Virus record (IMG/VR): IMGVR_UViG_3300033143_006101
Coordinates: 186,001-250,000 of that record
Length of the DNA stretch: 64,000 nt
Reading direction: 5' to 3' (one strand)
The notes below the pieces were generated by a model. That model had not been told where the DNA came from and searched no databases. It was given only the letters and a program-made list of their open reading frames with translations. Of this stretch, positions 778 through 60,229 are shown one piece after another (position 1 is the stretch's first letter; each line of letters opens with the position of its first letter). The translations under genes and the position numbers were made by a program.

Positions 778-2677
778 AGGACAACAACACAACCTCACTC
801 CCTCAAAGATCATAGGACAAGGAGGAGAAGCTGTCATATATAAAATAGATCAGAATACTGTTGCAAAAATATTCAAAGATAGTAATCACCCCGACTTCAT
901 TACTAAAGAAGAGAAAGATGCAGTTAAATTTAGACTAAAAGAGCACCAGAAAAAACTCCTTGAATTTCCCCAGGGGCTACCGTCAAATGTAATTGCACCA
1001 AAAGACATTATACAGGATAATAATAAAGTAATCGGGTATACAATGCAATTAGTATCCGCAGCTGAAGTATTGAAAAAGTACAGTGAAAAACAATTCCGAC
1101 AAATGGGCATAAATAACAGTACTGTAATAGATATTTTTTGGATGCTCAGAAATATTGTAACTAAAGTACATGAAAAAGATATAGTCATAGGCGACTTTAA
1201 TGATTTAAATATTATGGTTGTAAATACTAGTTCATATTTAATAGATACTGATAGCTTTCAATATGGGAAATGGTTATGCCGAGTATATACAACCAGATTT
1301 GTGGATCCATTAAATTGTAATGGAGAGATGATATTATCAAAACCACATAATAAAAATTCTGATTGGTATGCGTTCAATATTTTATTATTTCAATCATTAT
1401 TATTAGTAGATCCTTATGGAGGCGTGTTCAAACCAAAAGATAAAAGCCAAAACATACCTCATAACAAAAGACCTTTATATAGAATTACAGTATTCAACAA
1501 TGAAGTTAAATATCCTAAACCAGCAACACCGTATAGCATATTACAAGATGATCTATTACATCATTTCCAACAAGTATTTGAAAAAGATATTAGAACACCG
1601 TTTCCGGAAAAACTTTTAGAAATGGAATGGAAAAAATGTAAGAAATGTGATTTAATGCATGCTAGATCACAATGCCCTATTTGTATAGGCATAGTACCAG
1701 CACCAATAATAAAAGAGGCTATTCAAGTAAGAGGAAAAGTGACTGCTACAAAGAAATTTACAACAAAAGGTATTATCGTATTTGCTCAGGTATTAAATAA
1801 TAAATTATATTGGTTATTTACTAAAAAAGATGACAGTACCCCCATCTTATTTTTAGGTGTAGATAAAACAGAATCTGAATTACAAAAAGTAGTCCTAAGA
1901 CCCGGTAAAAGATTCAGAATATATAATAATTGTTATGTAGAAGGGCAAACTACAAAACTTTATTATAATGCAACTAAAACCAGGCACCCAGGACAGCAAA
2001 GTGCCCTCGATAGTCTGACCGTAGATGCTCTTGGTAGATTATCTATGTTTGATACTAATTCCAAACACATATATTGGGTAGATCAAGGAAAATTATTTAG
2101 AGATAATCAAACACATAGTATTGGTAACGATGCAACTACGATTGGAGAAATACTACAAAACCAAACATTATTCTGGGTAGGAGAAAAATTTGGATTTGGA
2201 TTTTATAGAGCGGGTAACTACACAACAGCGTTTACTTTCGATGCTGAAAAGAAAGGTATAAATGATACCATTATATTACCGTTTCATATCAAAGGACAAT
2301 TACTTGATTCCACATGTGTCTTTTCCAGTAATTTATGCTGGTTTTTTGTCTCAGTGCAAGAGAAAGGAAAAACAATTAATAAATGTACTGTCATTAACTA
2401 TATATTTCAACCTAATAAATGGGATTATAAAGAAGCAGAAGCTAATGATGGCTCCTGGCTCGGAGAAATACGAGGAAAAGCAGCCGTAGATAATATTTTA
2501 TTCTCAGCAACAGATGAAGGTATCGTTAGAATGAAAGCAGAAAATGATTGTATATATGAAGACACCGTATATCCTGATACAGAACCATTCGTTCATGCCG
2601 GATGTTATTTATTCATAGATCAAAATGGTCTTTATTCAATTAATAGAAATTCTATCACACATTTAAATATGAAATAG
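761..2677 (+). CDS. Ser/Thr protein kinase, YegI/TerY-associated type, with long C-terminal beta-rich domain
   Basis: Gly loop IGQGGEAVIY, AKIFK lysine, catalytic loop GDFNDLN, Mg-binding LIDTDS, CxxC-CxxC linker (CKKCDLMHARSQCPIC). Confidence 0.85.
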   Translation: MRISIKGQQHNLTPSKIIGQGGEAVIYKIDQNTVAKIFKDSNHPDFITKEEKDAVKFRLKEHQKKLLEFPQGLPSNVIAPKDIIQDNNKVIGYTMQLVSAAEVLKKYSEKQFRQMGINNSTVIDIFWMLRNIVTKVHEKDIVIGDFNDLNIMVVNTSSYLIDTDSFQYGKWLCRVYTTRFVDPLNCNGEMILSKPHNKNSDWYAFNILLFQSLLLVDPYGGVFKPKDKSQNIPHNKRPLYRITVFNNEVKYPKPATPYSILQDDLLHHFQQVFEKDIRTPFPEKLLEMEWKKCKKCDLMHARSQCPICIGIVPAPIIKEAIQVRGKVTATKKFTTKGIIVFAQVLNNKLYWLFTKKDDSTPILFLGVDKTESELQKVVLRPGKRFRIYNNCYVEGQTTKLYYNATKTRHPGQQSALDSLTVDALGRLSMFDTNSKHIYWVDQGKLFRDNQTHSIGNDATTIGEILQNQTLFWVGEKFGFGFYRAGNYTTAFTFDAEKKGINDTIILPFHIKGQLLDSTCVFSSNLCWFFVSVQEKGKTINKCTVINYIFQPNKWDYKEAEANDGSWLGEIRGKAAVDNILFSATDEGIVRMKAENDCIYEDTVYPDTEPFVHAGCYLFIDQNGLYSINRNSITHLNMK

Positions 2678-2690
2678 GAGGGCGTAATTA

Positions 2691-2804
2691 ATGGATCCAC
2701 TAAGAGAACGTAAACCAACTTTTAAAGAACAATGCTGGACTGCATTACCAGGAATAATATGTATCGTTATTATTTTAGGCGTAATAGTTTTTATATGTAA
2801 TTAA
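2691..2804 (+). CDS. small single-TM protein (37 aa)
   Basis: GGAGG upstream; MDPLRERKPTFKEQCWTALPGIICIVIILGVIVFICN. Confidence 0.45.
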   Translation: MDPLRERKPTFKEQCWTALPGIICIVIILGVIVFICN

Positions 2805-2834
2805 ATACAAAATAGGAGATTAAAGGAGGACACA

Positions 2835-3857
2835 ATGATAGTACCAAGTATTTACAAAAAAGATAACGCAGGAAGCTGGTCTTATAGACCAGATGAGATG
2901 AAAATATTTGAAGAAGCAGTGACTCACGCTAATGCAAATAAAATACCACATTCTTCAAAGGATAAGAAAAAAGTTCATCTATTACTCATTGATGTACAAA
3001 AAGATTTCTGTCACAAAGAAGGAAATTTGTATGTAGGAGGAAGAAGTGGAGAAGGAGCAATCGAAGATAGCCAACGTATAACAGAGTTCATCTATCGAAA
3101 AGTTGATAGAATAACAGAAATCACAACAACACTGGATACTCACTTTGCATTCCAAATTTTCTTCCCATGGTTTTGGTTGGACATTAATGATCGATACCTA
3201 GAAGCTCATTCTGTTATAGACACAGACATGATCAAGACCAGAAAAGTTAGACCTAATCCTGCTATAAGCTGGTGGTTAGCTAATAATAATTACATGTGGC
3301 TAGAGCAGTATGTTGCTCATTATACCACGGAGCTTGAAAAAGCTGGCAAATATCAATTGTATATTTGGCCACCACACTGCATTATCGGTAGCGAGGGGCA
3401 TAACGTAGTAGGGATCATACACGAAGCCAGGATGTTTCATTGTTTTGCTCGAGGGTCCCAATCCTTAGCTGAGATTAAAGGAGGGCATCCATTAACAGAG
3501 AATTATTCTGTGCTTTCTCCAGAAGTAAGAACGAGACAAGACGGGCAAGTGCTTACACAAAAGAATGTTAGATTCATTAAAACACTTTTAGATTCTGACA
3601 TTGTAATTATAGCAGGACAAGCAGCAAGTCACTGTGTAAAAAGTACAATTGATGATCTACTTGGAGAAATTAAAGCACAAGATCCGAGTCTTGCTAAGAA
3701 AATCTACATCATGAAAGATTGTATGAGTTCAGTAGTAGTTCCGAGTGGTCCGGATTTCACAGATGATGCTAATAACGCCCTAGATCAATTTGCATCTGAA
3801 GGTATGCACGTTGTAGAATCTACAGATGATAAATGGTTGGATGAGGCTTTATCATGA
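2835..3857 (+). CDS. cysteine hydrolase, isochorismatase/nicotinamidase family
   Basis: LLLIDVQKDFC, TLDTH, WPPHC, EIKG and GQAASHCVKST match the PncA-type D/K/C triad and metal ligands; RBS GGAGG. Confidence 0.85.
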   Translation: MIVPSIYKKDNAGSWSYRPDEMKIFEEAVTHANANKIPHSSKDKKKVHLLLIDVQKDFCHKEGNLYVGGRSGEGAIEDSQRITEFIYRKVDRITEITTTLDTHFAFQIFFPWFWLDINDRYLEAHSVIDTDMIKTRKVRPNPAISWWLANNNYMWLEQYVAHYTTELEKAGKYQLYIWPPHCIIGSEGHNVVGIIHEARMFHCFARGSQSLAEIKGGHPLTENYSVLSPEVRTRQDGQVLTQKNVRFIKTLLDSDIVIIAGQAASHCVKSTIDDLLGEIKAQDPSLAKKIYIMKDCMSSVVVPSGPDFTDDANNALDQFASEGMHVVESTDDKWLDEALS

Positions 3858-4043
3858 GTTGTATAGTGTGTGGTGAAGAACATGTAATAGTGTATATGGG
3901 ATTATCAGGAGCACCTAGTTTCTGTGAAAAACACGATACTTTAAAAAAAGCAGAGGAATACAGTATTGATTATGAACGACAACTAGAGGCCACAGGAAGA
4001 ATCGAAAACAATAAAAAATTACAAACAGCATGAGGAAAAACAA

Positions 4044-5300
4044 ATGACACAGGAAGAGGCAATTAACTCCATTTTTGGTGGAGATGACGTTTTTTTAACG
4101 GGAGGCCCGGGAACAGGCAAAACCCATGTAATTAATACGATTAAATCTATGATACGAAATAGAAATGTGGCCTGTACTGCCACAACAGGTATAGCTGCCA
4201 CTCATATAGATGGTAAAACTATACATTCATGGGCAGGGATAGGTATAAAAGGAGAGGCCGAACTTAATAACCTATCAGTTTTAGAAGATATTGCACATAA
4301 GAAGTGGACAAGAGAACGAGTTAGACAAACAGATATTCTTATCATAGATGAGATCTCCATGCTTCATCCATATCAATTACAAGCCGTTAATTTAATATGT
4401 CAATACGCAAGAAACACATCAGCTTTATTTGGTGGAATCCAAACTGTCCTATGTGGAGATTTTTTTCAATTGCCCCCTGTATTAGATAACTATCATGCTA
4501 ATGATAAAACATATGTCTTTGAAGCTGAAATTTGGGAGCACCTGGATCCAAAGATATGTTACTTATATCAAACATATAGACATGATGATACGGTATTTAT
4601 TTCAATACTGAATGAGATAAGAAGAAATAGTATATCAGATAGCAATAAAACAATGTTATACAATAAAATCAATCAACCAATTGATAATAAGTATAACCCA
4701 ACAAAGCTATTTGCTACTAATGCTGACGTTGATGCAATTAACAATTTGGAATTAGCTAAAATCCAAGAACAACCTCATTTTTTTACAATGGATAAATGGG
4801 CTATAAACGATTTTGCTCTAAAAAGTCTTTTGAAGGCTTGTTTAGCACCTGAAATACTACAATTAAAAGTTGGTGCGATAGTAATGTTTTTAAAGAATCA
4901 TGGTAGCTCGTATGCTAATGGTACAATTGGAAAAGTAATAAGATTTGATGAAGATGGAGACCCTGTAGTAGAAACAACTAATGGCACTATTGTCCATGTA
5001 CAACCAGACGCATGGGAAAGACAAGAATATAATAAAAGTTCAGGACTTAGCGAAACAATTGCTAGTGTAACTCAATTGCCTATACGTTTAGCCTGGGCGA
5101 TTACTATTCATAAATCTCAAGGTATGTCACTGGATTGTGCTGCAATGGATTTATCGAAATCTTTTGAAGATGGTATGGGGTATGTTGGGCTCTCGAGAGT
5201 ACGATCATTATCCGGAATTAAATTATTAGGATTGAATGATCAAGCTCTGAGAGTAGATGATAAAGTAATAGCATTTGACGAAGGAATTAAGGATATGTAA
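4044..5300 (+). CDS. Pif1/RecD-like SF1B DNA helicase
   Basis: Walker A GGPGTGKT, IIDEISM, CGDFFQLPPV, QLPIRLAWAITIHKSQGMSLD, YVGLSRV. Confidence 0.92.
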   Translation: MTQEEAINSIFGGDDVFLTGGPGTGKTHVINTIKSMIRNRNVACTATTGIAATHIDGKTIHSWAGIGIKGEAELNNLSVLEDIAHKKWTRERVRQTDILIIDEISMLHPYQLQAVNLICQYARNTSALFGGIQTVLCGDFFQLPPVLDNYHANDKTYVFEAEIWEHLDPKICYLYQTYRHDDTVFISILNEIRRNSISDSNKTMLYNKINQPIDNKYNPTKLFATNADVDAINNLELAKIQEQPHFFTMDKWAINDFALKSLLKACLAPEILQLKVGAIVMFLKNHGSSYANGTIGKVIRFDEDGDPVVETTNGTIVHVQPDAWERQEYNKSSGLSETIASVTQLPIRLAWAITIHKSQGMSLDCAAMDLSKSFEDGMGYVGLSRVRSLSGIKLLGLNDQALRVDDKVIAFDEGIKDM

Positions 5301-5302
5301 CT

Positions 5303-5917
5303 ATGAAATGGTATGTAGCAAGAACTAAGCATGGGGAAACTATATGTGAGCATACTACTTGGGACCAATTTAAATCTAAAGTAGACGGTGTGAAAGGTAT
5401 GACCTTTAAAAGTTTTGAGAGCAAAACAGCCGCTGAACAATGGATCCAACAACCACCAGTTCCTTATAGAACTGCAGACACCCCACACGAAAAGGATGTA
5501 ATTTATCTTTATGTGGACGGATCCTTCTCTTCAAAAAGAAACATCTCCGGATGGGGTTGGGTTGCTGTTAAAAATGATAAAAGAATAAGTGAAAATTATG
5601 GCTATCTAGATAATCTTTATGGCAGTAGAAATATTGTAGGAGAATTAACTGCCACACAGCAAGGAGTAGCAAGCATGACACCTATAAGAAATGGGCTTCC
5701 AATAGTTGTTGTACATGACTATATTGGTATAGCTAATTGGGCTTTAGGATATTGGGCAGCACGTAAAGAAGTAGCTATAGAATATAAACATTTCATGAGG
5801 CAATTCACTCATCTGATAGAGTCTAATCAATTGAGATTCGAAAAAGTAAGTGGACATAAAGATATTAAATGGAATGATTATGCAGACGAACTAACAAGAA
5901 AAGGATACCCTGATTAA
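5303..5917 (+). CDS. rnhA: ribonuclease HI with N-terminal hybrid-binding (Cauli_VI-like) domain
   Basis: N-terminal YVAR...WDQFKSKVDG...FKSF; catalytic YVDGS, GELTA, HDY, KVSGH...NDYADEL. Confidence 0.88.
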   Translation: MKWYVARTKHGETICEHTTWDQFKSKVDGVKGMTFKSFESKTAAEQWIQQPPVPYRTADTPHEKDVIYLYVDGSFSSKRNISGWGWVAVKNDKRISENYGYLDNLYGSRNIVGELTATQQGVASMTPIRNGLPIVVVHDYIGIANWALGYWAARKEVAIEYKHFMRQFTHLIESNQLRFEKVSGHKDIKWNDYADELTRKGYPD

Positions 5918-6309
5918 ATGAATGATACCTACACAGTACTAATAGAAAGATCATATTGGATAAGATTTATAACTTTCTTCCTTATCTCCAAATACAGAAA
6001 ACTAAAACACCATGAATGGTTTATAAATATAAAAGGTAATATTGCTTTAAAGAAAGCAGTAAAGCGTTATAGAAAAATTTATGTGGAGTATATTTTATAT
6101 GAAGATAATAAGAAAACGACTAAAAACTTATAGAACCTATATGGAATGCCCAGAATGTAAACAAGGGTTTATGATGTATAATATGACTGCAGTAAGTGGT
6201 GGAAAAGTTATCTTATATCGACATATTTGCAACAAATGTGGGATCGAGAAAGCATACGAAAAAACATATCCTTATGATACACAAGTAGAAGGAATAGCAA
6301 GAGTAGAAG

Positions 6310-6510
6310 ATGAATAAAATGAATTTAAAAAATAAAATACGAGTTGATATTGTTAGACATTTTATGTATTGGATTACTAGTATATTATGTATTATAGATG
6401 GCATTATTATAACTATTACTTTTGGATTTATAGATCCAGAATGGAGCTTAAATTATGGAAAAAGAACAATACATTACCAAGCAAAGTGGAGCGAACGATG
6501 GAAAAAGTAA
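6310..6510 (+). CDS. small membrane protein, paralog of 6498-6677
   Basis: hydrophobic segment with IIDGI..T.G...W shared with next ORF. Confidence 0.5.
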   Translation: MNKMNLKNKIRVDIVRHFMYWITSILCIIDGIIITITFGFIDPEWSLNYGKRTIHYQAKWSERWKK

Positions 6511-6677
6511 TACATTTCTTTAAATGGATAAAAAGTTTTGGTCTTATCATAGATGGAATTTGTGGGCTTCTTACTTTAGGAATGTATCGTAGTCGTTGGA
6601 ACCATAAAGCTTTGAAAAAAATAATTGTAATTCAATGTAATCAACGAATAAAATTAAAACAGGAGGCAAGCAAATGA
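6498..6677 (+). CDS. small membrane protein, paralog of 6310-6510
   Basis: ATG at 6498 (in frame with the tracked 6387 ORF); LIIDGICGLLTLGMYRSRW. Confidence 0.5.
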   Translation: MEKVIHFFKWIKSFGLIIDGICGLLTLGMYRSRWNHKALKKIIVIQCNQRIKLKQEASK

Positions 6678-7459
6678 GTACAGATGCAAATGATTTAATT
6701 CAAAGTGCCCAAGACGAAGGTCTAATCTCTCCAGAAAGTGGGAAAATATTAAACATACCGGATCTTGGAGCACAGATTCAAGACGCGTTAGGCGTAGAAG
6801 TGGACGATGTCCAAGCAAGTGAAGTTATCTTAGTTACTGTTATGCCAGATGATTCGGGATCTATTGCTATGGCCGATAATGAAGAGGCTATTCAAGAAGG
6901 TCATAATCTTGTACTAGATGCCTTGTTAGAATCAAAACAAACAGACGAGATTTTATTTCATACCAGATATTTAAATGGATATGTACTAAATCCATTCTGT
7001 TTTCTTAATACTGCTAATAAACTAACAGGCCAAAATTATCAAGCGGATAAAGGAACCCCGTTATATGATAATACAATTTTCCTATTAGCATCCATTCTAA
7101 CAAAAACCCAGGATTTTATGGACAATAATAGTGTACCCACACGTACAATTACATTAATTGTAACAGATGGAGAAGATATGCATTCAGTAAATCATACTGC
7201 AGACAATGTAAAAACAGTTATAACAGATATGCTAAAACAAGAGAATCATATCATAGCAGGTATGGGAGTAGATAATGGAGCTACTGATTTCAAAGAAGTA
7301 TTCAAAGAAATGGGTATACAGGATAGATGGATCCTTACACCCAAAAATAATGCGAGTGATATTCATAAGTGTTTTCAAGTATTTTCTCAATCTGCTATAA
7401 GAGCCAGCCAGGGTGCAGCAAACTTTTCCAAAACAAATTTAGGAGGTTTCGGAAACTAA
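6674..7459 (+). CDS. vWA (MIDAS) domain protein, TerY-like
   Basis: MIDAS-like DDSGSI, GTPLYD, LIVTDGED, AGMGV. Confidence 0.85.
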   Translation: MSTDANDLIQSAQDEGLISPESGKILNIPDLGAQIQDALGVEVDDVQASEVILVTVMPDDSGSIAMADNEEAIQEGHNLVLDALLESKQTDEILFHTRYLNGYVLNPFCFLNTANKLTGQNYQADKGTPLYDNTIFLLASILTKTQDFMDNNSVPTRTITLIVTDGEDMHSVNHTADNVKTVITDMLKQENHIIAGMGVDNGATDFKEVFKEMGIQDRWILTPKNNASDIHKCFQVFSQSAIRASQGAANFSKTNLGGFGN

Positions 7460-7461
7460 AC

Positions 7462-7489
7462 AAAAACCCCGCTACTCAGCGGGGTTTTT
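7462..7489. terminator. bidirectional intrinsic terminator between convergent blocks
   Basis: AAAAACCCCGC-TACTCA-GCGGGGTTTTT. Confidence 0.85.
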
Positions 7490-53234: not shown

Positions 53235-53651
53235 ATGTCGTATAAAAATAAGCAAAGGCAATTAGAATACCAACGAAACTGGATGAGGAAAAGAAGAAAT
53301 ATGTTTTTTTCAGGTAAAGTTTGTGCGAAATGTGGGTCTTCAAAAAAATTGGTATTACATCATATAAATCCAGAAGAAAAAGAAAGTCATTATGTTTGGT
53401 CGTGGTCAGAAAAACGAAGAGAAGCAGAGCTTAAAAAATGTGTTGTTTGGTGCGAAAAGTGTCATATTGAATATCATACAAATAAACGGAGATTAAAAAA
53501 TATACATGGTACACGTACTGGATATAATAAGTATAAATGTCGTTGCGATGCTTGTATACAAGCTAATAGCCTATATCAAAAACAATGGCGTAATCAAAAA
53601 CAATTAGCTGGCGTTGTGTCCGAACTGGTTAGGTCATCGATTGCAACTTGA
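53235..53651 (+). CDS. HNH endonuclease, C-terminus overlaps tRNA-Cys
   Basis: CAKCGS..LVLHHINP...CVVWCEKCHIEYH; HGTRTGY..CRCDAC. Confidence 0.85.
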   Translation: MSYKNKQRQLEYQRNWMRKRRNMFFSGKVCAKCGSSKKLVLHHINPEEKESHYVWSWSEKRREAELKKCVVWCEKCHIEYHTNKRRLKNIHGTRTGYNKYKCRCDACIQANSLYQKQWRNQKQLAGVVSELVRSSIAT

Positions 53652-53681
53652 TATATGCAGGTTCGAATCCTGTCAACGCCT
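53610..53681 (+). tRNA. tRNA-Cys(GCA)
   Basis: GGCGTTG/CAACGCC, ATCGA-TTGCAAC-TTGAT, U73. Confidence 0.9.
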
Positions 53682-53687
53682 AATAAA

Positions 53688-53760
53688 ACTCCCAGAGTTC
53701 GACTGGCTGAACGCCTGTGTTACAAGCAGGTATGTCTTGGTTCAAATCCAAGTGGGAGTA
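53688..53760 (+). tRNA. tRNA-Val(UAC), atypical (G8, G32)
   Basis: ACTCCCA/TGGGAGT, GTTC/GAAC D-stem, CCTGT-GTTACAA-GCAGG, CTTGG-TTCAAAT-CCAAG. Confidence 0.8.
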
Positions 53761-53774
53761 ATAAGGAGAATAAT

Positions 53775-54362
53775 ATGTTTGAATTACAAGATTATTTAAA
53801 AAAATACGAAGATTTTAATGTAATAGATACAGATGCTTATTGTATTACAAAATCTAATATGAAAGATCAATTAAGTCATTGGGGTGCAGAAGAGATTGCT
53901 GAAAGATCATTTATTAATGCTCTTTGGATTACTTGTTCAGAATCCGGAAAGATAATATCATCAGATAATTTTGCAGAAACTGGACTAAAACATTTATTAG
54001 AAGCTGTACAATACGAAGTAGAAAAGAAGAGGAGACTTGTAGATGCTTTTCTTTTTAATAGAGCAATGTTAGGTAACATGAAACATTATGTAAATGCTAT
54101 TGATTTTGATCCTATAACGGACAAGGATAAATTAGTAACGGAGGGTATTTTTGGTAGTTTGTGGGGAGTAAATATAACAATAATTACTACAATACCTCAT
54201 AAAACTATTTTTTCAATAGAAGCTAAAAATACTTTAGGCTATTATCGAGTAGAAGGAGATATATTAGAAATAGGAATTAATCCAGATGCAGTAGCAGTAG
54301 CAACTAAGAAAAAGTATATAAGGTCTAAGTTAGAACCTTTACCTTTAAACCTTGAAGAATAA
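53775..54362 (+). CDS. truncated major capsid protein paralog (195 aa)
   Basis: LEAVQYEVEKKRRLVDAFLFNRAMLGNMKHYVNAIDFDPIT...TEGIFGSLWGVNI aligns by eye with MCP LETLQYEVERHRLLVDKFIMNRAELGDLKKNINAIDYDPIT...TGIFGSIWGVNI; ATG 53775 behind AAGGAG. Confidence 0.8.
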   Translation: MFELQDYLKKYEDFNVIDTDAYCITKSNMKDQLSHWGAEEIAERSFINALWITCSESGKIISSDNFAETGLKHLLEAVQYEVEKKRRLVDAFLFNRAMLGNMKHYVNAIDFDPITDKDKLVTEGIFGSLWGVNITIITTIPHKTIFSIEAKNTLGYYRVEGDILEIGINPDAVAVATKKKYIRSKLEPLPLNLEE

Positions 54363-54363
54363 T

Positions 54364-54436
54364 GGGAGCGTAGCTCAATTGGGAGAGCGTCTGCCTTGCA
54401 CGCAGAAGGTCGCGAGTTCGACTCTCGCCGCCTCCA
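54364..54436 (+). tRNA. tRNA-Ala(UGC)
   Basis: TCTGC-CTTGCAC-GCAGA, G3:U70 wobble, A73. Confidence 0.92.
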
Positions 54437-54716
54437 ATGGATCCATTAAGTTAGATCCCCCTTCTCTACACCAAGAATGCTAAAATATGAGGGGCTATGA
54501 GTAGAGAACGGGTATTAATAGCCCCTCATAAATAAGATGATATGAAGTAATCCACTATCAGGAGGTATACCATGTCATCTTGTAACAAATTATTAACCAC
54601 TGCATTATGGATGATTGCAGGGTGTCTCATAGCGATACTTTTAACCTTGTTCACTTTTATGAACAAGATGGATTTAATACTTCAAACATTAAAAAGTATG
54701 GCTGTTCTTTAAAGAC

Positions 54717-54855
54717 GGGGGAGTGCAGGCCAATGGTTGGCCATCTGATTTTGGGTCAGACAAAGCACTGCATTAAAGCTGTATCAACTTGAACCTTTTA
54801 GGTTCCATAAGAAACCAGCGTACAAGCATATCGGTTCGATTCCGACTCTCCCCCA
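54717..54855 (+). ncRNA. tRNA-like RNA 1 (UUG loop) with 70-nt variable-region insertion
   Basis: GGGGGAG/CTCCCCC, GGCC/GGCC D-stem, TCTGA-TTTTGGG-TCAGA, TCGG-TTCGATT-CCGA; insert 54761-54830. Confidence 0.85.
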
Positions 54856-54857
54856 CA

Positions 54858-55073
54858 TGGCTCAACTGGTATAGCCAATCAGTTAAACGCAGAGATAACA
54901 GGCTCCTTTGAAAAAAACATGAGAGTCTCTGACAAAGGAAAGTTGATCACTAAACCTTGATACAAATCGCATGCGTGTATCTGCCTTCCAGGAAAGACTG
55001 GTTTACCCTATGCTTTCATCGGCATCGCCTTCATCGGCGTGATAGGGGTTGACAGCTCGGAAAGACGGGCAAC
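54858..55073 (+). ncRNA. candidate ~215-nt structured RNA
   Basis: ORF-free, GC-richer; hairpins CCAG-GAAAGA-CTGG, GCTCG-GAAAGA-CGGGC, ACCCTAT/ATAGGGG, CGCC/GGCG, GATAC/GTATC. Confidence 0.55.
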
Positions 55074-55075
55074 AC

Positions 55076-55218
55076 GGCGAAGTAGCCAAGTTGGGTAAAG
55101 GCACTAGAATTGAAATCTAGCTAACAGCAGACTAACTAAATTAACTTGAACTCAGAAGAGTTCCCCATAACTTAGTTTACAAGCAAAATTATCGATGGTT
55201 CGAGTCCATCCTTCGCCA
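55076..55218 (+). ncRNA. tRNA-like RNA 2 (UGA loop, A73) with 73-nt variable-region insertion
   Basis: GGCGAAG/CTTCGCC, CTAGA-ATTGAAA-TCTAG, GATGG-TTCGAGT-CCATC; insert 55121-55193. Confidence 0.85.
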
Positions 55219-55220
55219 AT

Positions 55221-55357
55221 GCCCGAGAAGCTCATGGAGAGCACTTTTTCTACTAAAAAAGAGGTAACAATTCTTTTGGGTTATTTCAACTTGAACTCTT
55301 TAGAGTTCCATCGGAACTAACTTACAAGCATTTGCCGTTCGATTCGGCACTCGGGCT
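55221..55357 (+). ncRNA. tRNA-like RNA 3 (irregular anticodon loop) with 71-nt variable-region insertion
   Basis: GCCCGAG/CTCGGGC, GCTC/GAGC, CTTTT-TCTACTAA-AAAAG, TGCCG-TTCGATT-CGGCA; insert 55262-55332. Confidence 0.85.
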
Positions 55358-55377
55358 CATAAAATTTTAGAGGGTTT

Positions 55378-55761
55378 ATGCCATACAAGGATAAGGAGAA
55401 GCAATCAGAGTATCAGTTGCAATGGATGAAAGCTAGAAGAAATGCTTTCTTTAATGGCAAGTGTTGTAAAAAATGTGGGTCTATGTTTAACTTAGTCTTA
55501 CACCATAAAAACCCAGCCGAGAAAGAAGATCATAGGATATGGTCGTGGTCGGAAGAAAGAAGAAATGCAGAACTTAAAAAATGTGTTGTTTGGTGTTTAT
55601 CATGTCACATAGAACATCATGCTGATAGACTGAGATTAAAAGAAATACACGGCACAAGAACTGGTTATAAGAATTATGGGTGTCGATGTAAAAAATGCAC
55701 ACAAGCAAATACGGTTTACATAAGAAATTGGAATAGAAGAAAAAAAGGGGTATTCGTCTAG
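55378..55761 (+). CDS. HNH endonuclease, paralog of 53235-53651, C-terminus overlaps tRNA-Glu
   Basis: LVLHH.NP, WSWSE.RR.AELKKCVVWC..CH, HGTRTGY...CRC shared with 53235. Confidence 0.85.
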   Translation: MPYKDKEKQSEYQLQWMKARRNAFFNGKCCKKCGSMFNLVLHHKNPAEKEDHRIWSWSEERRNAELKKCVVWCLSCHIEHHADRLRLKEIHGTRTGYKNYGCRCKKCTQANTVYIRNWNRRKKGVFV

Positions 55762-55819
55762 TGGACTAGGACATCGGGTTTTCAATCCGACAACAGGAGT
55801 TCAATTCTCCTATACCCTA
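55747..55819 (+). tRNA. tRNA-Glu(UUC)
   Basis: GGGGTAT/ATACCCT, TCGGG-TTTTCAA-TCCGA. Confidence 0.92.
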
Positions 55820-55832
55820 ATAAGGAGACAAT

Positions 55833-56489
55833 ATGAAACCAAGTGATGCAGGCATAGCAAACTCATTACATTTTACGAGTAAAGATTATCCTGAAGAGGT
55901 GAAGAAGAATTTTCTTACTATCACCTAGGATGGGAAAAGAGGCAGACCAAAGTTTCCTGAAAGGACTTGTTCACGATGTGAAAAGATTACTGAGAGGAAA
56001 AACAAATCCGGGATGTGTCAAAAATGTTTAAAACTTACTAACAAAGAAAGAAGAGAGGAAGAAAAAGCAGCTGAGCCTAAGTATAACTGTAAAGAATGCA
56101 CTGCACCGATTACCAGGCATAGTAAATCAGGATTGTGTCAGACATGTTTTAGTTTAACTCGTACCAAGATGCCAACAGAGGAAGTACTCGAAGAAGATGT
56201 TAAAAAATTAAGCGTAATAGCAATGAGTAAAAAGTATGGGGTATCTGATGCAACCATAAACAAATGGATGAGGCTTTATGGAATAAAAAGAGTACTTTCT
56301 TGGCGTAGGACATTGCCATCCGAAGAACAGCTTAAAAAAGATTTAGTGGATCTGCGGTATGACGATATAGCAAAGAAGTATAACGCAACAAAAAACCAAA
56401 TTAACAAATGGATAAAGCATTACAATCTACAAGGCTATAAAAAGATTTTAAGAATAGAGGGAAAGAAAAACGAAAACAATAAAGGGTGA
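55833..56489 (+). CDS. zinc-finger plus HTH-repeat protein, interrupted by an in-frame TAG at 55926
   Basis: AAGGAG-ATG 55833 is in frame with the tracked 56013 ORF; CSRC/CQKC/CKEC/CQTC; two HTH-like repeats. Confidence 0.55.
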
Positions 56490-56931
56490 TTTAATCAAGT
56501 TAGCATTGGAAGGGCACTTCGATGTTATTATTCATGGATGTAATTGTTATCGTACCATGGGTAAAGGTATTGCAAGTACTATTAAACGAGTTTTTCCTGA
56601 AGCATACACAGCCGATAGAGAAACACGTGCCGGAGCCAGCAAGCTTGGTACTTTTTCTCATGCTACAGTCGTAAGACCAAAGGGAAGAATAACTATTGTA
56701 AATGCATACACACAAGACAGATTTAATCCTAAATACAGTAAAGGAAAAAGCATGGCTGATTACCGGGCAATAACTGATGTAATGAAAAGCATCAAAGTGG
56801 CATTTCACGGATTTAGAATTGGTTATCCTAAAATAGGAGCAGGGCTTGCTCGTGGTGATTGGAATAAAATATCTGAAATTATTGATAGAGAGTTGGAAGG
56901 AGAAGATCACACGTTGGTAGTATTACCATAA
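56470..56931 (+). CDS. macrodomain (ADP-ribose-processing) protein with apparent ACG start
   Basis: KTIKGDLIKLA, IIHGCNCYRTMGKGIA, VNAYTQ, YPKIGAGLARGDW. Confidence 0.8.
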   Translation, partial: TKTIKGDLIKLALEGHFDVIIHGCNCYRTMGKGIASTIKRVFPEAYTADRETRAGASKLGTFSHATVVRPKGRITIVNAYTQDRFNPKYSKGKSMADYRAITDVMKSIKVAFHGFRIGYPKIGAGLARGDWNKISEIIDRELEGEDHTLVVLP

Positions 56932-56936
56932 AATAC

Positions 56937-57011
56937 AGAGGCATAGCATAGTTTGGTCAAATGCAGCGGGTTTTGATCCCGTGATCTCAAGTTCAAATCT
57001 TGATGCCTCTA
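56937..57011 (+). tRNA. tRNA-Gln(UUG), conventional
   Basis: AGAGGCA/TGCCTCT, GCGGG-TTTTGAT-CCCGT. Confidence 0.9.
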
Positions 57012-57630
57012 ATAAAGGAGATAGATGTGGGTGAAGAGCATAAAGATTGTGATTGTGGTGGTGATGAAGATGATTGTGTTTGTGACAATGATGATGATAT
57101 AATTATACTAGATGATGAAGAAGACATAGAGAAAATAAGCACTCCAAGTATAAATAATTTGTTAGAAACAATAATTAAAGAATTACAGACTATGAATACT
57201 AAAATAGAAAAGATTAATAATAAATTAAAAGCATTAAGTGATAGGGTAGACGAAATTTATATGGATGGTTTTTGATATGGGAAATTAAGATGAAACCAAA
57301 TGATGTATTAAAATGGGATCCACATTGGGTTAAATATAGTGACCCCAATAAAGATAGATTAGTCAGTTTAAAAGTAACACATCTTCGGACAGAGACTTCT
57401 GTAGAAGTACGAAATTATGCATCAGGTTTAGATTATACTGTCACAATGGATTTTTTAAAAGATCGATTACATGTACTGACCGATTACACAGATGGAAAAA
57501 GAATGTAAGTGTGGAGCCATGATGCTCCATATAACATTTGCTAACAAAGCAAAGTTAGCAGTATATCATTGCAAGAAGTGTGGAAGAACAGTCACAGAAC
57601 CATTAAATGAAACTATAAAGAGGATATAAT

Positions 57631-58740
57631 ATGAAAGCACCACCAAAGAAAAAAACAACAGGTAAAGGTAAAACAGCAAGTAAAAATGCCCCTAAGAGAA
57701 AACCAGTAGAAAGAGAAGAAATTTCAAAGGTTGAAGAGATATTCTCAGAGGACAATGCTCGTATAAGATTCGGGGTAGAATGTGTACCAGCGATTAAGGT
57801 ACGAATGCAATCAGATCCAAATTCTTTTGCCCATTTGTTTCATAGTTATATATTAGAGCAAGGGCAGATAGGATGCCATAACTTACACCCACCAAGAAAA
57901 ATTCTTTACCTGGAAGATAAACAAGAAGGTCCTGAGAGTTTAGGTACTCGAGTAGATATTAGTAATAAAACTTCAAGGGTTTTTCCCAGTGAATATGTTA
58001 TAGCCATAACTGTGGATATACCCCTATCAGAAATAGCGATTCGTACCAAGATAGACATACTCCATAAAGAGCTTGTTGATACAGCTTCTTCAAAATTAAA
58101 CAGGAATATAGCTACGAATTGGCTCAAGCTTCTTTATGCCTCTGCACTGGTTAATAAAAATATTAAAACTCTAAGAAGCTTCTGGAGGAACATCCCAGTT
58201 ATTCGTTGGAAAGTTCTTTTTAGTTTAATCACTAAAGCGAGAAGTAAAATTCATCAAAGGGGGTACCAGACATTGGTATTTTTAGTTCACCCGGCAACAC
58301 TTGCGGAATTGGAACTATTTCTTGGAGGCCATCTAAGAGTAACTTCAACCAGTTTTCCATATGTTAAACAATCAATATATGTTCCGGAAGGGTTTGTGCT
58401 TATATTTCCCAATGATAGGACTATGGCTGCAAAGAATATACGAATAGATTTGACTGCGTTTGGGGCTAATAAGTTTGTTATGGGATCAGCTACCTTTGGG
58501 TTTATGTTTGTACAGTCTGAGTCCTCTGTTATTCTTGATCCCGAATCCGTAGTTTGTATTAGAATGAGTAATTTTAAAATTCCTGGTTATCTAAAAGAAA
58601 TTAAGTCTTATCTGATGCCTACGGTTTTTTCTAAGCTAAAAGAGAAAAGCATAAAGCTGTGGGGAAAAGTTAAGAAGTTAAAGAATAAGATAATGAATAG
58701 GATAAAGAAGTTTAGGAAGAAAAATGCTGGAATCGCATAG
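57631..58740 (+). CDS. divergent near-full-length major capsid protein paralog with basic termini
   Basis: RIRFGVECVPAI vs MCP RLRFGAEMIPLI; RVFPSEY vs RIFPPEF; IRIDLT...FGFMFV...DPESV vs IRVDLT...YGWLFV...NPRSV. Confidence 0.8.
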   Translation: MKAPPKKKTTGKGKTASKNAPKRKPVEREEISKVEEIFSEDNARIRFGVECVPAIKVRMQSDPNSFAHLFHSYILEQGQIGCHNLHPPRKILYLEDKQEGPESLGTRVDISNKTSRVFPSEYVIAITVDIPLSEIAIRTKIDILHKELVDTASSKLNRNIATNWLKLLYASALVNKNIKTLRSFWRNIPVIRWKVLFSLITKARSKIHQRGYQTLVFLVHPATLAELELFLGGHLRVTSTSFPYVKQSIYVPEGFVLIFPNDRTMAAKNIRIDLTAFGANKFVMGSATFGFMFVQSESSVILDPESVVCIRMSNFKIPGYLKEIKSYLMPTVFSKLKEKSIKLWGKVKKLKNKIMNRIKKFRKKNAGIA

Positions 58741-58809
58741 AGGTCGAGTGCACCTGCCTTGTAAGCAGGAGGGTAAACCCCCGCGTCAGTTCAAATCTGA
58801 CTTCCAGCT
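58726..58809 (+). tRNA. tRNA-Thr(UGU) with long variable arm
   Basis: GCTGGAA/TTCCAGC, CCTGC-CTTGTAA-GCAGG, 15-nt variable region with GGG-TAAA-CCC, U73. Confidence 0.85.
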
Positions 58810-58811
58810 CA

Positions 58812-59260
58812 TAAAGCAAAATGCAGATACTGCTTTAGGAAGTTAGAGATACTTCTAAAAAACTCCGTACATACTACGATAGTGTATGGGTGCTCTTTCT
58901 GCTGAGATCCTTATGGGAGTAGAATCACTAGGAGGCGAGACTGGTGAAAAACTAAAAACCGCCAGAAGACTAAAAATGCTGCATCGTTTTTAGTCTGAGG
59001 TGCTTGATGGCGAAAGTTAGACGCTGAGTAAGGGCGGAAACGTCAAGAAAGCCGAGGTTGTGATATTAGCAACGAGCATATGGGTATCAAATCCCATTCA
59101 AGCACATCTCTGTTCGGATCGTTGGTCACTGTTTGGGTAGAATCCTTCTGAGATACCGTAATTCGATCTTTATGCCCAACATTGTGCATGCAGAGTAATC
59201 CTCGGACCGAATGTACCCCTTAAGGAAGGAGCTAAGGTTTGGGGTATTTAATTGAAGGTA
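58812..59260 (+). ncRNA. candidate large structured RNA A with embedded tRNA-like module
   Basis: ~450 nt without a long ORF; AAAGCA/TGCTTT, AGACTAAAAA/TTTTTAGTCT, GTGCTTGA/TCAAGCAC, ATGGG/CCCAT, TACCCC/GGGGTA. Confidence 0.6.
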
Positions 59261-59267
59261 TAATTAA

Positions 59268-59728
59268 ATGATAAAAAGATGGAAAGATAACGATATACTT
59301 ATTATGAAAAGTATGATTAATGAAAAGACAAGCCCAGAAATTGCAGAGATATTTGAAACTTCTACTAAAGCAATTAATAGTTTATTCACAAGAAGAAAAA
59401 TTATTCGAAATAAAGAAATATCAAAAGAGCATGTTAGAAAAAGTTTGATAAAAAGAAATAAAAAAAATTATGGGGATAAAAATGGTAACTGGAAAGGAGG
59501 AATATCAAAAAATAATTATCATTACAAAAAATTACAAATTGAAAAATTTCCAGAGAGAGAGTAAAGGCACGAGGTAAAGTGCATAAAGCAATTAAAAGCG
59601 GAAAGTTAAAAAGAAAACCATGTGAAATTTGTAATTCAAAAGATGTGCAGGCACATCATAATGATTATTCTAAACCACTAGAGGTTAAATGGTTTTGTAG
59701 AAAACATCATAGAGAGTATGAACAATAG
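59268..59728 (+). pseudogene. HNH endonuclease split by an (AG)5 repeat, abutting tRNA-Asp
   Basis: NGNWKGG then TAA at 59562; removing one AG gives RVKARGKV...PCEICNSKDVQAHHNDYSKPLEVKWFCRKHH, ending at TAG 59726-59728. Confidence 0.75.
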
Positions 59729-59799
59729 GAGCTTTAGTTTACTTGGGAAAACACTACCCTGTCACGGTAGAGTAAGGAGATCGAAACTCCTAAGCTCCG
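59728..59799 (+). tRNA. tRNA-Asp(GUC)
   Basis: GGAGCTT/AAGCTCC, CTACC-CTGTCAC-GGTAG, G73; T-loop ATCGAAA. Confidence 0.9.
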
Positions 59800-59802
59800 A
59801 AT

Positions 59803-60198
59803 TGTCAGGTAGGTTGCCTCACGAGAGGCTCGGCATTTGATAGTACCAATCCCGTAATTAGTAGGGCTATCAAATACTGCTCGGTACTGGTTAGGGTCTG
59901 AGTCAGTTTGGTTTCTAGAAAAGCTAGATTATTATAGTTTCATCAGGTTATTAGGACCGCTTCGTGAAGCAACTTGGATGAACAACTTCTAGCTGATCAT
60001 TCTGAAGAACTTGGCGGTTAGGGGAAACAGATGTGATAAGGATGAAGATTGAAACTAGGATCCAATTGTAAACTTATCTTACTTAAAAATAGTAGAAGGG
60101 ATTGAGGCGACTCCCACTCGGTTTATAATATTAAATAAACTCTAACTATTCTGAGTAAAAGCCTTCACCCTAGATTAGCGACCTGGGGCTATCTGACA
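59803..60198 (+). ncRNA. candidate large structured RNA B closed by a terminal helix
   Basis: TGTCAGGTAG (59803-59812) pairs with CTATCTGACA (60189-60198); AGGTTGC/GCGACCT, GCCTC-ACGA-GAGGC, TTTGATAG/CTATCAAA. Confidence 0.6.
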
Positions 60199-60229
60199 CA
60201 ACTATGGATCCATAGTTATTTGGGGTATA

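What the first reader, a model, noticed from the sequence alone, without database searches (positions are those of the whole stretch)
1302..60212. Highly iterated palindrome TGGATCCA across the window
By eye I count 18 copies: 1302, 2692, 4543, 5441, 9015, 10367, 11394, 16197, 17814, 25651, 25863, 30026, 30965, 34264, 50179, 51706, 54438, 60205, plus about 15 more GGATCC cores. At ~30% GC an independent-base model predicts roughly 0.5 octamers and about 4 hexamers (my estimate). Copies fall in all three reading frames (V-D-P, W-I-H, Y-G-S) and in intergenic DNA, so one protein motif cannot explain them. Phages usually avoid such palindromes. Inference: a HIP1-like methylation-linked signal, or a binding, packaging or replication mark.
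Basis: partly seen in the sequence, partly recalled or inferred. Interest (0 to 1): 0.65.

Follow-up and report, generated by a model that had tools for sequence, protein, structure and literature searches.

The report
Iterated TGGATCCA palindrome in jumbo phage
A 253-kb uncultured jumbo phage carries about ten times more copies of the palindrome TGGATCCA than chance, codon usage or its protein sequences allow, while its more distant relatives avoid the same GGATCC core; this points to a DNA-level signal whose reader is still unknown.

Summary
The window holds 18 TGGATCCA, against 0.94 expected, and 34 GGATCC, against 8. The whole 252,876-bp phage genome holds 54 and 116, and TGGATCCA is its most over-represented octamer.

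With amino-acid sequences kept and synonymous codons shuffled, ORFs hold 35 octamers against 8.4±2.5. Rare codons (TCC 7%, ATC 12%) are recruited to build the word in all three frames.

Sites are spread evenly along the genome and within genes, and are about three-fold denser in intergenic DNA. About 16 copies are independent instances of a 22-bp perfect palindrome (half-site TTAACTATGGA). Most lie at tips of intergenic hairpins, and seven cluster in an iteron-rich region beside a Mu Gam-like gene. Coding copies often carry the extension on one side only, which looks like independent half-site recognition.

Relatives at 83-85% capsid identity have 0 octamers and avoid GGATCC. Fragments of the nearest relatives (87-93%) share the excess, at different positions.

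The phage has two cytosine-5 methyltransferase genes of unknown specificity, and no Vsr, MutH or BamHI homologue.

Best reading: a clade-specific, dyad-symmetric DNA recognition element read by an unidentified dimeric protein. A HIP1-like, methylation-linked origin is a close rival.

The parts
1302..1309 (.). TGGATCCA in ORF 761-2677(+), read V-D-P
2692..2699 (.). TGGATCCA; with the preceding A it forms ATG-GAT-CCA, the start of a 37-aa membrane-like ORF behind a Shine-Dalgarno site
4543..4550 (.). TGGATCCA in the Dda-like helicase ORF 4044-5300(+), read L-D-P
5441..5448 (.). TGGATCCA in ORF 5303-5917(+), read W-I-Q with the rare ATC codon
9015..9022 (.). TGGATCCA with one extended half (TTAACTA), in the spacer between minus-strand genes; the 70-aa ORF called there has no Shine-Dalgarno site
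10367..10374 (.). TGGATCCA in ORF 10079-10762(-), read L-D-P; relatives have V-D-P, L-V-P or L-E-P without the word
11394..11401 (.). TGGATCCA followed by TAG, just 3' of the ribonucleotide reductase gene, in ORF 11002-11574(-), read Y-G-S with the rare TCC codon
16197..16204 (.). TGGATCCA in ORF 16062-16457(-), read L-D-P; relatives have L-D-G, L-K-T or L-D-K
17814..17821 (.). TGGATCCA in ORF 16457-17938(-), read W-I-H; relatives have W-I-K or W-M-S
25651..25658 (.). TGGATCCA inside a 14-bp palindrome, in ORF 25344-25670(+), read L-D-P
25863..25870 (.). TGGATCCA preceded by CTA, in ORF 25682-27664(+), read M-D-P
30086..30093 (.). TGGATCCA in the portal ORF 27686-31981(+), read W-I-H; six relatives have W-I-Q without the word.
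30965..30972 (.). TGGATCCA in the portal ORF, read W-I-H; relatives have W-T-K, W-M-K, W-A-K or W-I-H (ATA)
34264..34271 (.). TGGATCCA in ORF 33846-34343(+), read M-D-P; relatives have M-D-A or I-D-D
50179..50186 (.). TGGATCCA inside a 14-bp palindrome, in ORF 50016-50240(+), read L-D-P. A paralogue at genome 14,173-14,514 carries the word at the same codons; relatives have L-S-Q or L-N-Q.
51706..51713 (.). TGGATCCA in non-coding DNA 36 nt after tRNA-Ser (51584-51670)
54438..54445 (.). TGGATCCA starting at the first base after tRNA-Ala (54363-54437)
60198..60219 (.). 22-bp extended palindrome (19 of 22 to the consensus) centred on TGGATCCA at 60205-60212, 18 nt upstream of ORF 60230-60703
5519..61928 (.). 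16 further GGATCC cores that lack one or both T/A flanks; first at 5519, last at 61923

Best explanation
TGGATCCA is the invariant core of a dyad-symmetric DNA recognition element. The full form is a 22-bp palindrome whose half-site is TTAACTATGGA. I infer that it is read on double-stranded DNA by a homodimeric, sequence-specific protein made by this phage clade, or made in its host only in infected cells.

Full-length, presumably high-affinity, copies sit in intergenic spacers. Many are at the tips of intercistronic hairpins, where a palindrome costs nothing. Seven lie within 3.5 kb of an iteron-rich region next to a Mu Gam-like gene, which I take to be the early control region.

Bare or half-extended octamers are kept at roughly one per 4.7 kb throughout coding DNA. 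They are paid for with rare codons and amino-acid replacements. This implies selection, or a conversion-type drive, on the number of sites rather than on their positions.

Shown: the excess, its DNA-level nature, the extended consensus, one-sided half-site extensions, restriction to one clade, and turnover of positions. Inferred: that a protein reads it, and what binding achieves. My guess for the function is genome-wide marking or organisation of phage DNA, plus local control in the Gam-side region. Cytosine methylation of the GGATCC core by one of the two phage C5 methyltransferases may coexist with this reading. It would explain why this lineage can afford a site its relatives avoid.
For: Size of the excess:
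- Octamer excess is about 10-fold against Markov orders 1-3, and it is the top 8-mer in the genome.
- It survives protein-preserving synonymous shuffles: 35 against 8.4±2.5.

Codon-level evidence:
- [L/M/V]-D-P is realised as the word 19 times, against 5.4 expected.
- x-G-S-z is realised 11 times, against 1.3 expected.
- W-I-[H/Q] is realised 5 times, against 0.8 expected.
- The [L/M/V]-D-P tripeptide itself occurs 45 times, against 26 expected from amino-acid frequencies.

Distribution:
- 17 of 54 copies are intergenic, where about 10% of the genome lies.

Extended element:
- Flanks carry information out to ±7.
- About 16 copies lie within 3 mismatches of the 22-bp palindrome.
- Flanks beyond that are unrelated, apart from the two overlapping tandem copies 18 bp apart, so these are convergent instances and not duplications.
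- The flank motif never occurs with a different core.
- The TAG extension follows the octamer in 7 of 62 coding half-sites (1.45% expected, P=3e-5), mostly on one side only, and in 25 of 46 non-coding half-sites. One-sided extension is what independent monomer contacts predict and what a hairpin does not.

Uniqueness and clade:
- The 14-mer core of the palindrome occurs 10 times here, and once each in only 25 other contigs of 2.9 million viral contigs.
- Five fragments of the nearest relatives hold 5 octamers against 0.41 expected (P=7e-5).
- More distant relatives hold 0.
Against: - No candidate reader protein was identified. There is no XRE-type HTH in the genome, and no Pfam hits for ORFs around the cluster except Mu Gam.
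- Ascertainment by the core inflates its apparent invariance.
- Left and right flanks covary modestly. That could reflect a structural requirement (hairpin or cruciform) or a mixture of two site classes.
- Dispersed intragenic binding sites have no demonstrated function in any phage.
- A restriction-type 6-bp core, and a relative excess of one-base variants at the outer positions, are the hallmarks of methyltransferase-linked HIPs.
Confidence: 0.42

Rival explanations
1. A HIP1-like, methylation-linked palindrome. One of the two phage C5 methyltransferases (or a host enzyme) methylates GGATCC. Methylation-directed or very-short-patch-like biased repair, or selection for a dense set of methylated sites, then ratchets near-cognate words into TGGATCCA across the genome.
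For: - The word is an octamer palindrome around a 6-bp restriction-type core.
- Enrichment is graded: 6-mer 116 against 39-48, 8-mer 54 against about 5.
- One-base variants are in relative excess at the outer positions (observed/expected 1.8-5.9) and not at inner ones (0.5-1.4). Elhai reports the same pattern for HIP1 (PMC4390886).
- GGGATCCC is a described alternate HIP with the same core.
- There are two C5 methyltransferase genes at genome 126,430-127,209 and 127,542-128,420, with octamers in the spacers around them.
- Relatives that lack these genes avoid GGATCC (best match in G001 is only 25-28% identical).
- Positions turn over between relatives, as a generative process predicts.
Against: - The specificity of both enzymes is unknown. 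As far as I recall (not checked here), the characterised BamHI methylases are N4, not C5.
- One of the two genes has only motifs I-VIII.
- Two unrelated prophage elements with a ~70% identical methyltransferase show no GGATCC excess.
- There is no Vsr, MutH or BamHI homologue in the phage.
- The deamination-type neighbours TGGATTCA and TGGATCTA are not depleted.
- Density is 214 per Mb against 1000-2000 for HIPs, and no periodicity is seen.
- A 6-bp enzyme does not explain the 22-bp consensus or the TAG half-site extension.
Confidence: 0.3
2. An RNA-level or single-strand structural element. The palindrome exists to form hairpins (terminators, processing or stability signals) with a GAUC tetraloop, and the coding copies are incidental.
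For: - Intergenic copies fold into strong hairpins (z-scores -3.8 to -7.6).
- Several are followed by a U-run and then the next gene's Shine-Dalgarno site.
- Stems around the octamer differ in sequence but stay complementary.
- Nearby extra half-copies pair with it.
Against: - It cannot explain 35 intragenic octamers built with rare codons and spread uniformly along genes.
- Those copies lack two-sided extension: mean arm extension is 0.68 nt in coding DNA.
- One-sided TAG extensions do nothing for a hairpin.
- Many other intercistronic hairpins in the same operons lack the word.
- An octamer alone gives only a 2-bp stem.
Confidence: 0.1
3. Passive imprint of the host. The host genome is itself rich in the word, or the host's repair machinery is biased, and the phage merely drifts toward it.
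For: Oligonucleotide usage of phages often tracks that of their hosts (general knowledge). The trait is shared by a subclade from three different studies.
Against: - The phage brings its own polymerase, helicase, recombinase and SSB.
- Building a 50%-GC word runs against the AT bias of a 33%-GC genome.
- The 22-bp consensus is unique to this genome among 2.9 million viral contigs.
- The host is unknown, and no genome with a comparable excess was found. The best case seen, a Clostridiaceae genome at 51% GC, has 95 in 2.4 Mb, which by my own uniform-base estimate is about 2.6-fold.
Confidence: 0.08
4. An artefact: a peptide or codon-usage effect, duplicated sequence, or BamHI-linker or assembly contamination.
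For: GGATCC is a common cloning and linker site. [L/M/V]-D-P is a plausible peptide.
Against: - Protein-preserving and codon-order shuffles both fail to reproduce the excess.
- All three frames plus non-coding DNA are involved.
- Flanks are unrelated except for the two overlapping tandem copies.
- ORFs run through the sites, and protein-level alignments to homologues at the sites show no gaps.
- An independent assembly from another sample is 99.97% identical over 3.5 kb, including two GGATCC.
Confidence: 0.02

Closest known systems
HIP1 (GCGATCGC) and alternate HIPs such as GGGATCCC in cyanobacteria (Elhai 2015, PMC4390886; Xu, Lawrence and Durand 2018, PMC5861425)
   Same: An octamer palindrome around a 6-bp restriction-type core. 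It is strongly over-represented against Markov and codon-aware nulls and occurs in all frames and in intergenic DNA. One-base variants concentrate at the outer positions. DNA methyltransferase genes are present in the genome. One alternate HIP shares the GGATCC core.
   Different: - It lies in a phage genome of 33% GC, not a cyanobacterial chromosome.
- The excess is about 10-fold (214 per Mb), against 15-300-fold (1000-2000 per Mb).
- No periodic spacing is seen.
- Sites are not conserved between relatives.
- The cognate methyltransferase is unproven.
- The word extends to a 22-bp consensus, which the HIP papers read here do not describe.
Stoperators of cluster A mycobacteriophages (L5, Bxb1): dozens of repressor-binding sites dispersed through the phage genome (recalled from the literature, not retrieved here)
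   Same: One short site is iterated tens of times across a phage genome. Many copies lie in short spacers between genes of the same operon, which implies a single phage-encoded reader protein.
   Different: Stoperators are asymmetric 13-mers oriented with transcription, almost all intergenic, and tied to lysogeny. Here the site is a perfect palindrome, two thirds of the copies are intragenic, and no repressor or integration module was seen.
Dispersed palindromic architecture sites in bacteria: parS/ParB, NBS/Noc, SBS/SlmA, matS/MatP (recalled from the literature)
   Same: Palindromes of 12-16 bp bound by dimeric proteins, present in tens of copies and often inside genes, acting on chromosome organisation and not on local gene expression.
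   Different: None is known in a phage at this density. No ParB, Noc or MatP-like gene was identified here; there is only a weak PhuZ/TubZ-like tubulin hit.
REP/BIME-type extragenic palindromes
   Same: Intergenic copies form stable hairpins between co-transcribed genes.
   Different: REPs are excluded from coding DNA and are spread by RAYT transposases. No Y1 transposase is present, and most copies here are intragenic.
Restriction-site avoidance in phages, and VSP-repair-driven excess of CCWGG in E. coli (recalled from the literature)
   Same: The same class of word (a 6-bp Type II site) is under strong compositional pressure. Relatives G001 and G002 show classical avoidance of GGATCC, and this phage shows total avoidance of GCGC.
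   Different: The sign is reversed for GGATCC in this lineage, and no Vsr gene is present.

Membership tests
HIP (highly iterated palindrome) class | Palindromic octamer that is the most over-represented 8-mer of the genome | tested here: met
   54 observed against 5.1 (order-3 Markov); ranks first among all 8-mers
HIP (highly iterated palindrome) class | Present in coding DNA in all frames and in non-coding DNA, beyond what codon usage or peptides explain | tested here: met
   35 against 8.4±2.5 under a protein-preserving shuffle. By position of the leading T in the codon the counts are 21, 11 and 5, and 17 are intergenic
HIP (highly iterated palindrome) class | A methyltransferase in the genome that recognises an inner part of the palindrome | not testable with these tools
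   Two C5 methyltransferase genes are present but their specificity cannot be read from sequence. Two elements with a ~70% identical enzyme lack GGATCC excess
HIP (highly iterated palindrome) class | One-base deviations biased to the first and last positions | tested here: met
   Outer variants have observed/expected 1.8-5.9; inner variants 0.5-1.4
HIP (highly iterated palindrome) class | Density near 1 per kb (1000-2000 per Mb) | tested here: not met
   214 octamers per Mb and 459 hexamers per Mb (against PMC4390886)
HIP (highly iterated palindrome) class | Sites conserved between related genomes, and periodic spacing (Xu et al. 2018) | tested here: not met
   Of 14 alignable GGATCC positions counted (9 in G000, 6 in the nearest relatives), only one is shared. 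The spacing CV of 0.89 is indistinguishable from random
Dispersed operator / stoperator-like binding-site array | One extended consensus shared by independent copies | tested here: met
   About 16 copies lie within 3 mismatches of a 22-bp palindrome. Flanks beyond it are unrelated, apart from the two overlapping tandem copies
Dispersed operator / stoperator-like binding-site array | Preferential location in short intergenic spacers | tested here: inconclusive
   Intergenic DNA is enriched three-fold (17 of 54 in about 10% of the genome), but two thirds of the copies are intragenic and spread uniformly along genes
Dispersed operator / stoperator-like binding-site array | A cognate DNA-binding protein encoded by the phage | tested here: inconclusive
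   No XRE HTH and no family hits near the cluster except Mu Gam. Most small ORFs were not examined
Dispersed operator / stoperator-like binding-site array | Asymmetric site oriented with transcription (stoperators proper) | tested here: not met
   The site is a perfect palindrome
REP/BIME elements | Confined to extragenic DNA and associated with a RAYT (Y1) transposase | tested here: not met
   37 of 54 copies lie in called ORFs; there is no PF01797 match

The most novel reading that the evidence does not exclude
This would be the first HIP-like system in a virus. A jumbo-phage subclade descends from ancestors that avoided the restriction site GGATCC. It has turned the same site into a genome-wide self-mark, about one per 4.7 kb and embedded in a 22-bp dyad element. 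The mark would be written by phage cytosine methylation and read by a dedicated phage protein, to organise, protect or discriminate phage DNA from host DNA. Because the phage is small and the trait is young and clade-restricted, it could make the long-open question of what HIPs are for experimentally tractable.
Probability: 0.2. Interest if true: 0.85.

Novelty: new variant of a known kind. Interest (0 to 1): 0.6.

Why it matters
Over-represented palindromes of the HIP type have been known for thirty years, mainly in cyanobacteria, and their function is still debated. Phages are the textbook case of the opposite behaviour, palindrome avoidance.

Here one phage lineage shows both behaviours at once. 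GCGC, CGATCG, AGGCCT and GCTAGC are completely absent. GGATCC, which its relatives avoid, is 2.5-3-fold enriched, and the octamer is 10-fold enriched, at the cost of rare codons and amino-acid changes.

The contrast between enriched and avoiding relatives gives a natural comparative design for finding the responsible gene. A 253-kb genome with about 54 sites is also a far simpler test bed than a cyanobacterial chromosome with thousands. If the reader protein exists, its 22-bp site would be a new phage DNA-recognition module.

Tried and rejected
- **Peptide or codon explanation:** rejected by synonymous and codon-order shuffles and by per-frame counts.
- **Duplication or repeat-family explanation:** rejected. 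Only the two overlapping tandem copies, 18 bp apart, share flanks.
- **Linker or assembly artefact:** rejected. Protein-level alignments to homologues at the sites show no gaps, and a second sample yields the same sequence.
- **VSP-type signature:** no clear depletion of deamination neighbours at the octamer level. AGATCC/GGATCT is low, but AGATCT is low in all relatives too.
- **Genes that could drive a HIP-type ratchet:** no Vsr, MutH, BamHI, N6/N4 or Dam-type methyltransferase, or Y1 transposase.
- **Methyltransferase specificity:**
  - PDB gives only generic HhaI/HaeIII core similarity.
  - NCBIfam gives only the dcm superfamily.
  - Phage-database hits carry no informative names.
  - Neighbourhoods of homologues show orphan prophage genes without a restriction enzyme.
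- **Spacing and position:** no periodic or even spacing, and no bias toward gene ends.
- **Promoters:** there is no excess of sigma-70-like promoter matches in the clustered region, and none was seen at the palindromes.
- **Rfam:** only tRNAs were found.
- **Searches for the 16-mer and 14-mer palindrome** in viral, metagenome and genome collections returned only single, unrelated hits. A 288-kb phage with 21 octamers turned out to be 51% GC, unrelated and not enriched.
- **A Clostridiaceae genome** with 95 octamers in 2.4 Mb is only mildly enriched and has the wrong GC content to be an obvious host.
- **Closer relatives:** two single-protein scans of viral contigs found none. Nucleotide-level alignment to relatives was too weak, at 65-75% identity, to trace individual substitutions.

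Full report
**What the window is.** The window is bases 186,001-250,000 of a single 252,876-bp contig. The contig has 33.3% GC and a 72-bp terminal overlap, and IMG/VR classes it as complete. It is an uncultured jumbo phage.
- Structural and packaging genes: portal, HK97-type major head protein, large terminase.
- Replication and recombination genes: a PolA-type polymerase with a UDG domain, DnaB-like and Dda-like helicases, a UvsX-like recombinase, SSB, an SbcC-like nuclease and a ribonucleotide reductase.
- At least 13 tRNA genes.
- Intein-like insertions in several large genes.
- No isolated phage is close. The best capsid match is 38% identical, to an enrichment-culture virus.
- Strong AGGAGG Shine-Dalgarno words suggest a host that uses a canonical Shine-Dalgarno sequence. 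The host is otherwise unknown.

**The observation.**
- TGGATCCA occurs 18 times in the window, against 0.94±0.99 in dinucleotide-preserving shuffles.
- GGATCC occurs 34 times, against 7.98±2.71.
- Genome-wide there are 54 octamers and 116 hexamers.
- Markov models of orders 1 to 3 predict 4.2-7.0 octamers, and the word is the most over-represented 8-mer of the genome.
- 47% of GGATCC cores carry both the T and the A flank.
- Among the sixteen palindromes of the form xyGATCy'x', only this one is in excess.

I called 398 ORFs with a simple longest-ORF rule, giving 90% coding.
- I shuffled synonymous codons within each ORF of at least 80 codons, which keeps every protein sequence and hence every dipeptide. 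The shuffles give 8.4±2.5 octamers (largest 16) against 35 observed, and 41.9±4.4 hexamers against 88. Shuffling codon order gives 3.7 and 28.
- In the window alone the figures are 11 against 2.8±1.5.
- Per frame:
  - 45 [L/M/V]-D-P tripeptides are spelled as the word 19 times (5.4 expected).
  - 98 suitable x-G-S-z contexts are spelled so 11 times (1.3 expected, using TCC, a 7% codon).
  - 7 W-I-[H/Q] contexts are spelled so 5 times (0.8 expected, using ATC, a 12% codon).
  - The tripeptide [L/M/V]-D-P is itself 1.7-fold commoner than amino-acid frequencies predict.
- Where homologues in relatives can be aligned, they usually carry different residues at exactly these codons, for example portal W-I-H against W-I-Q in six relatives.

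The signal is therefore at the DNA level and is strong enough to alter proteins. The enrichment does not disappear under the codon-aware null.

**Anatomy.**
- Sites are spread along the genome as a Poisson process would place them (spacing CV 0.89; random 0.97±0.12).
- They are spread uniformly along genes.
- Intergenic DNA, about 10% of the genome, holds 17 of the 54, and several more lie in doubtful short ORFs.
- Flanks carry information out to about ±7, giving the consensus TTAACTA-TGGATCCA-TAGTTAA.
- About 16 copies lie within three mismatches of this 22-bp perfect palindrome, nearly all in non-coding DNA.
- They are not duplications. Outside the palindrome the flanks are unrelated, apart from the two overlapping tandem copies 18 bp apart.
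- The flank motif never occurs around any other core.
- Seven extended copies lie within 3.5 kb (genome 95.2-98.8 kb). This region sits where two gene blocks diverge, contains several tandem iterons and borders a Mu Gam-like gene. I read it as an early control region.
- Others lie in the 50-60-nt spacers of a long plus-strand operon (112-129 kb).
- In that operon and in the cluster, most copies sit in strong predicted hairpins (z from -3.8 to -7.6), usually at the tip. In the operon several are followed by a U-run and the next gene's ribosome-binding site. Other hairpins in the same operon lack the word.
- In the window, one copy is an ATG-GAT-CCA start codon region (2692), one starts at the first base after tRNA-Ala (54438), and one is a 22-bp extended palindrome 18 nt before an ORF (60205).

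**One element or two?** Coding copies rarely extend symmetrically. The mean extra arm is 0.68 nt, against 2.2 in non-coding DNA. They still carry the TAG extension on one side in 7 of 62 half-sites, where 1.45% is expected (P=3e-5). There is therefore a continuum from bare octamer through half-extended to full 22-mer. One-sided extension is what independent contacts by two protein monomers would select. It does nothing for a hairpin. This is my main reason for preferring a protein-read DNA element over a purely structural one, and over a 6-bp enzyme site alone.

**Phylogenetic distribution.**

| Relative | Capsid identity to G000 | Size | Octamers | GGATCC (expected) |
|---|---|---|---|---|
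| G001 | 85% | 217 kb | 0 | 2 (10-31) |
| G002 | 83% | 161 kb | 0 | 0 (12-19) |
| G004 | 67% | 236 kb | 3 | 19 (23) |

- G001 and G002 show classical restriction avoidance of GGATCC. G004 is neutral (octamer expectation 3.6).
- None of the three has the extended palindrome.
- Most core proteins of these relatives are only about 50% identical to G000.
- Five short contigs from the nearest relatives (capsid 87-93% or polymerase 66-69% identical, from three studies, 28.5 kb in all) hold 5 octamers against 0.41 expected (P=7e-5). All five have the form TTGGATCCAA.
- I counted 14 alignable GGATCC positions between G000 and these fragments. Only one is shared, an M-D-P in the polymerase.
- The excess is thus a trait of a subclade. 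It is maintained in number while positions turn over.
- In all of IMG/VR the 14-bp centre of the palindrome occurs once each in 25 other contigs, and ten times in this genome.

**Candidate writers.**
- The genome has two cytosine-5 methyltransferase genes in the operon that is richest in intergenic copies. They lie at 126,430-127,209 (motifs I-VIII only) and 127,542-128,420, separated by a 75-aa ORF.
- There is no N6/N4 or Dam-type enzyme, and no Vsr, MutH or BamHI homologue.
- The 292-aa enzyme belongs to a very widespread family of orphan prophage methyltransferases, about 70% identical across phyla. Two such elements show no GGATCC excess.
- Specificity cannot be read from the sequence.
- That this lineage tolerates 116 copies of a site its relatives avoid does suggest the site is protected here. 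Methylation by one of these enzymes is the obvious candidate, but this is inference.

**Weighing the explanations.**
- A HIP-type, methylation-linked origin accounts for the restriction-type core, the graded 6-, 7- and 8-mer enrichment, the outer-position bias of variants and the turnover of positions.
- It does not account for the 22-bp consensus or the half-site extensions. It also lacks a repair component, a proven enzyme, HIP-like density, conservation and periodicity.
- An array of binding sites for a dimeric protein accounts for the consensus, the continuum of site strengths, the intergenic bias and the cluster beside the Gam-like gene. It has no identified protein, and no precedent in phages for dozens of intragenic sites.
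- The nearest analogues are mycobacteriophage stoperators and the bacterial parS, Noc, SlmA and MatP sites.
- The two readings are compatible: methylation could write what a protein reads.
- I put the protein-read dyad element first (0.42) and the methylation-linked HIP second (0.30). Hairpin-only (0.10), host imprint (0.08) and artefact (0.02) are minor.

**Limits.**
- Gene calls are my own simple ORF calls.
- The host, the expression programme and the modification state of the DNA are unknown.
- No sequencing run was listed, so no reads were examined.
- The nearest relatives are known only as fragments, so the link between any gene and the trait could not be tested.

Noticed in passing
whole window and whole genome (G000): GCGC is completely absent from the 253-kb genome (0 against about 70 expected), as are CGATCG, AGGCCT and GCTAGC. 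CCTAGG occurs 2 times against 23, and CTAG is halved. This is strong classical restriction avoidance in the same genome that over-uses GGATCC. Relatives avoid different sets; for example G001 has 0 CTTAAG against 81, 0 CCATGG and 0 CTGCAG.
   Followed up: partly
window 27686-31981 (portal), 11489-14482 (ribonucleotide reductase); genome 599-2404 (thymidylate-synthase-like), 137366-140407 (terminase): Several essential genes are much longer than usual. They carry intein or homing-endonuclease-like inserts: an endonuclease family hit inside the reductase, an intein N-terminal motif in the synthase-like ORF, and a portal match confined to the first about 370 of 1431 residues.
   Followed up: partly
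window 55076-55218 (+): Rfam matches a tRNA over 143 nt that ARAGORN did not report. The sequence looks like a tRNA interrupted by an insertion of about 60-70 nt after the anticodon arm, so it may be an intron-containing or disrupted tRNA.
   Followed up: no
genome 95,100-99,500 (locus L051:3100-7500): An iteron-rich, largely non-coding stretch where two gene blocks diverge. It holds three tandem 21-bp repeats, 32-bp and 39-bp tandem pairs, a 28-nt perfect-type inverted repeat and seven extended palindromes, next to a Mu Gam-like gene (98,147-98,659). It may be a replication origin or an early control region.
   Followed up: partly
whole genome: The E. coli Chi octamer GCTGGTGG occurs 18 times (4.2 expected). 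16 copies are on the plus strand and 2 on the minus strand, and almost all lie in the sense strand of plus-strand genes. This is probably a coding Ala-Gly-Gly effect and not a Chi function.
   Followed up: partly
genome 152,823-155,402 (locus L121:823-3402, minus): Database homologues of the PolA-type DNA polymerase, including the 100%-identical entry, carry a family-4 uracil-DNA-glycosylase domain (PF03167) in the same protein along with the exonuclease and polymerase domains.
   Followed up: no
genome 143,802-144,881 (locus L120:11802-12881, minus): A weak PHROG match (E 3.8e-5) to PhuZ-type phage tubulin. If real, this phage may position its DNA with a tubulin spindle. That would be relevant if the palindromes act as organising sites.
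   Followed up: no
window 50016-50240 and genome 14,173-14,514: Two diverged paralogues within the genome carry TGGATCCA at the same L-D-P codons, while homologues in all relatives have L-S-Q, L-N-Q or similar. This implies either gain before an internal duplication, parallel gain, or gene conversion.
   Followed up: no
locus L161 (JGI sample 3300033153): A 3.5-kb contig from another sample is 99.97% identical to genome 227,194-230,708. The same phage strain therefore recurs in sibling samples, which could supply reads for methylation or polymorphism analysis.
   Followed up: no
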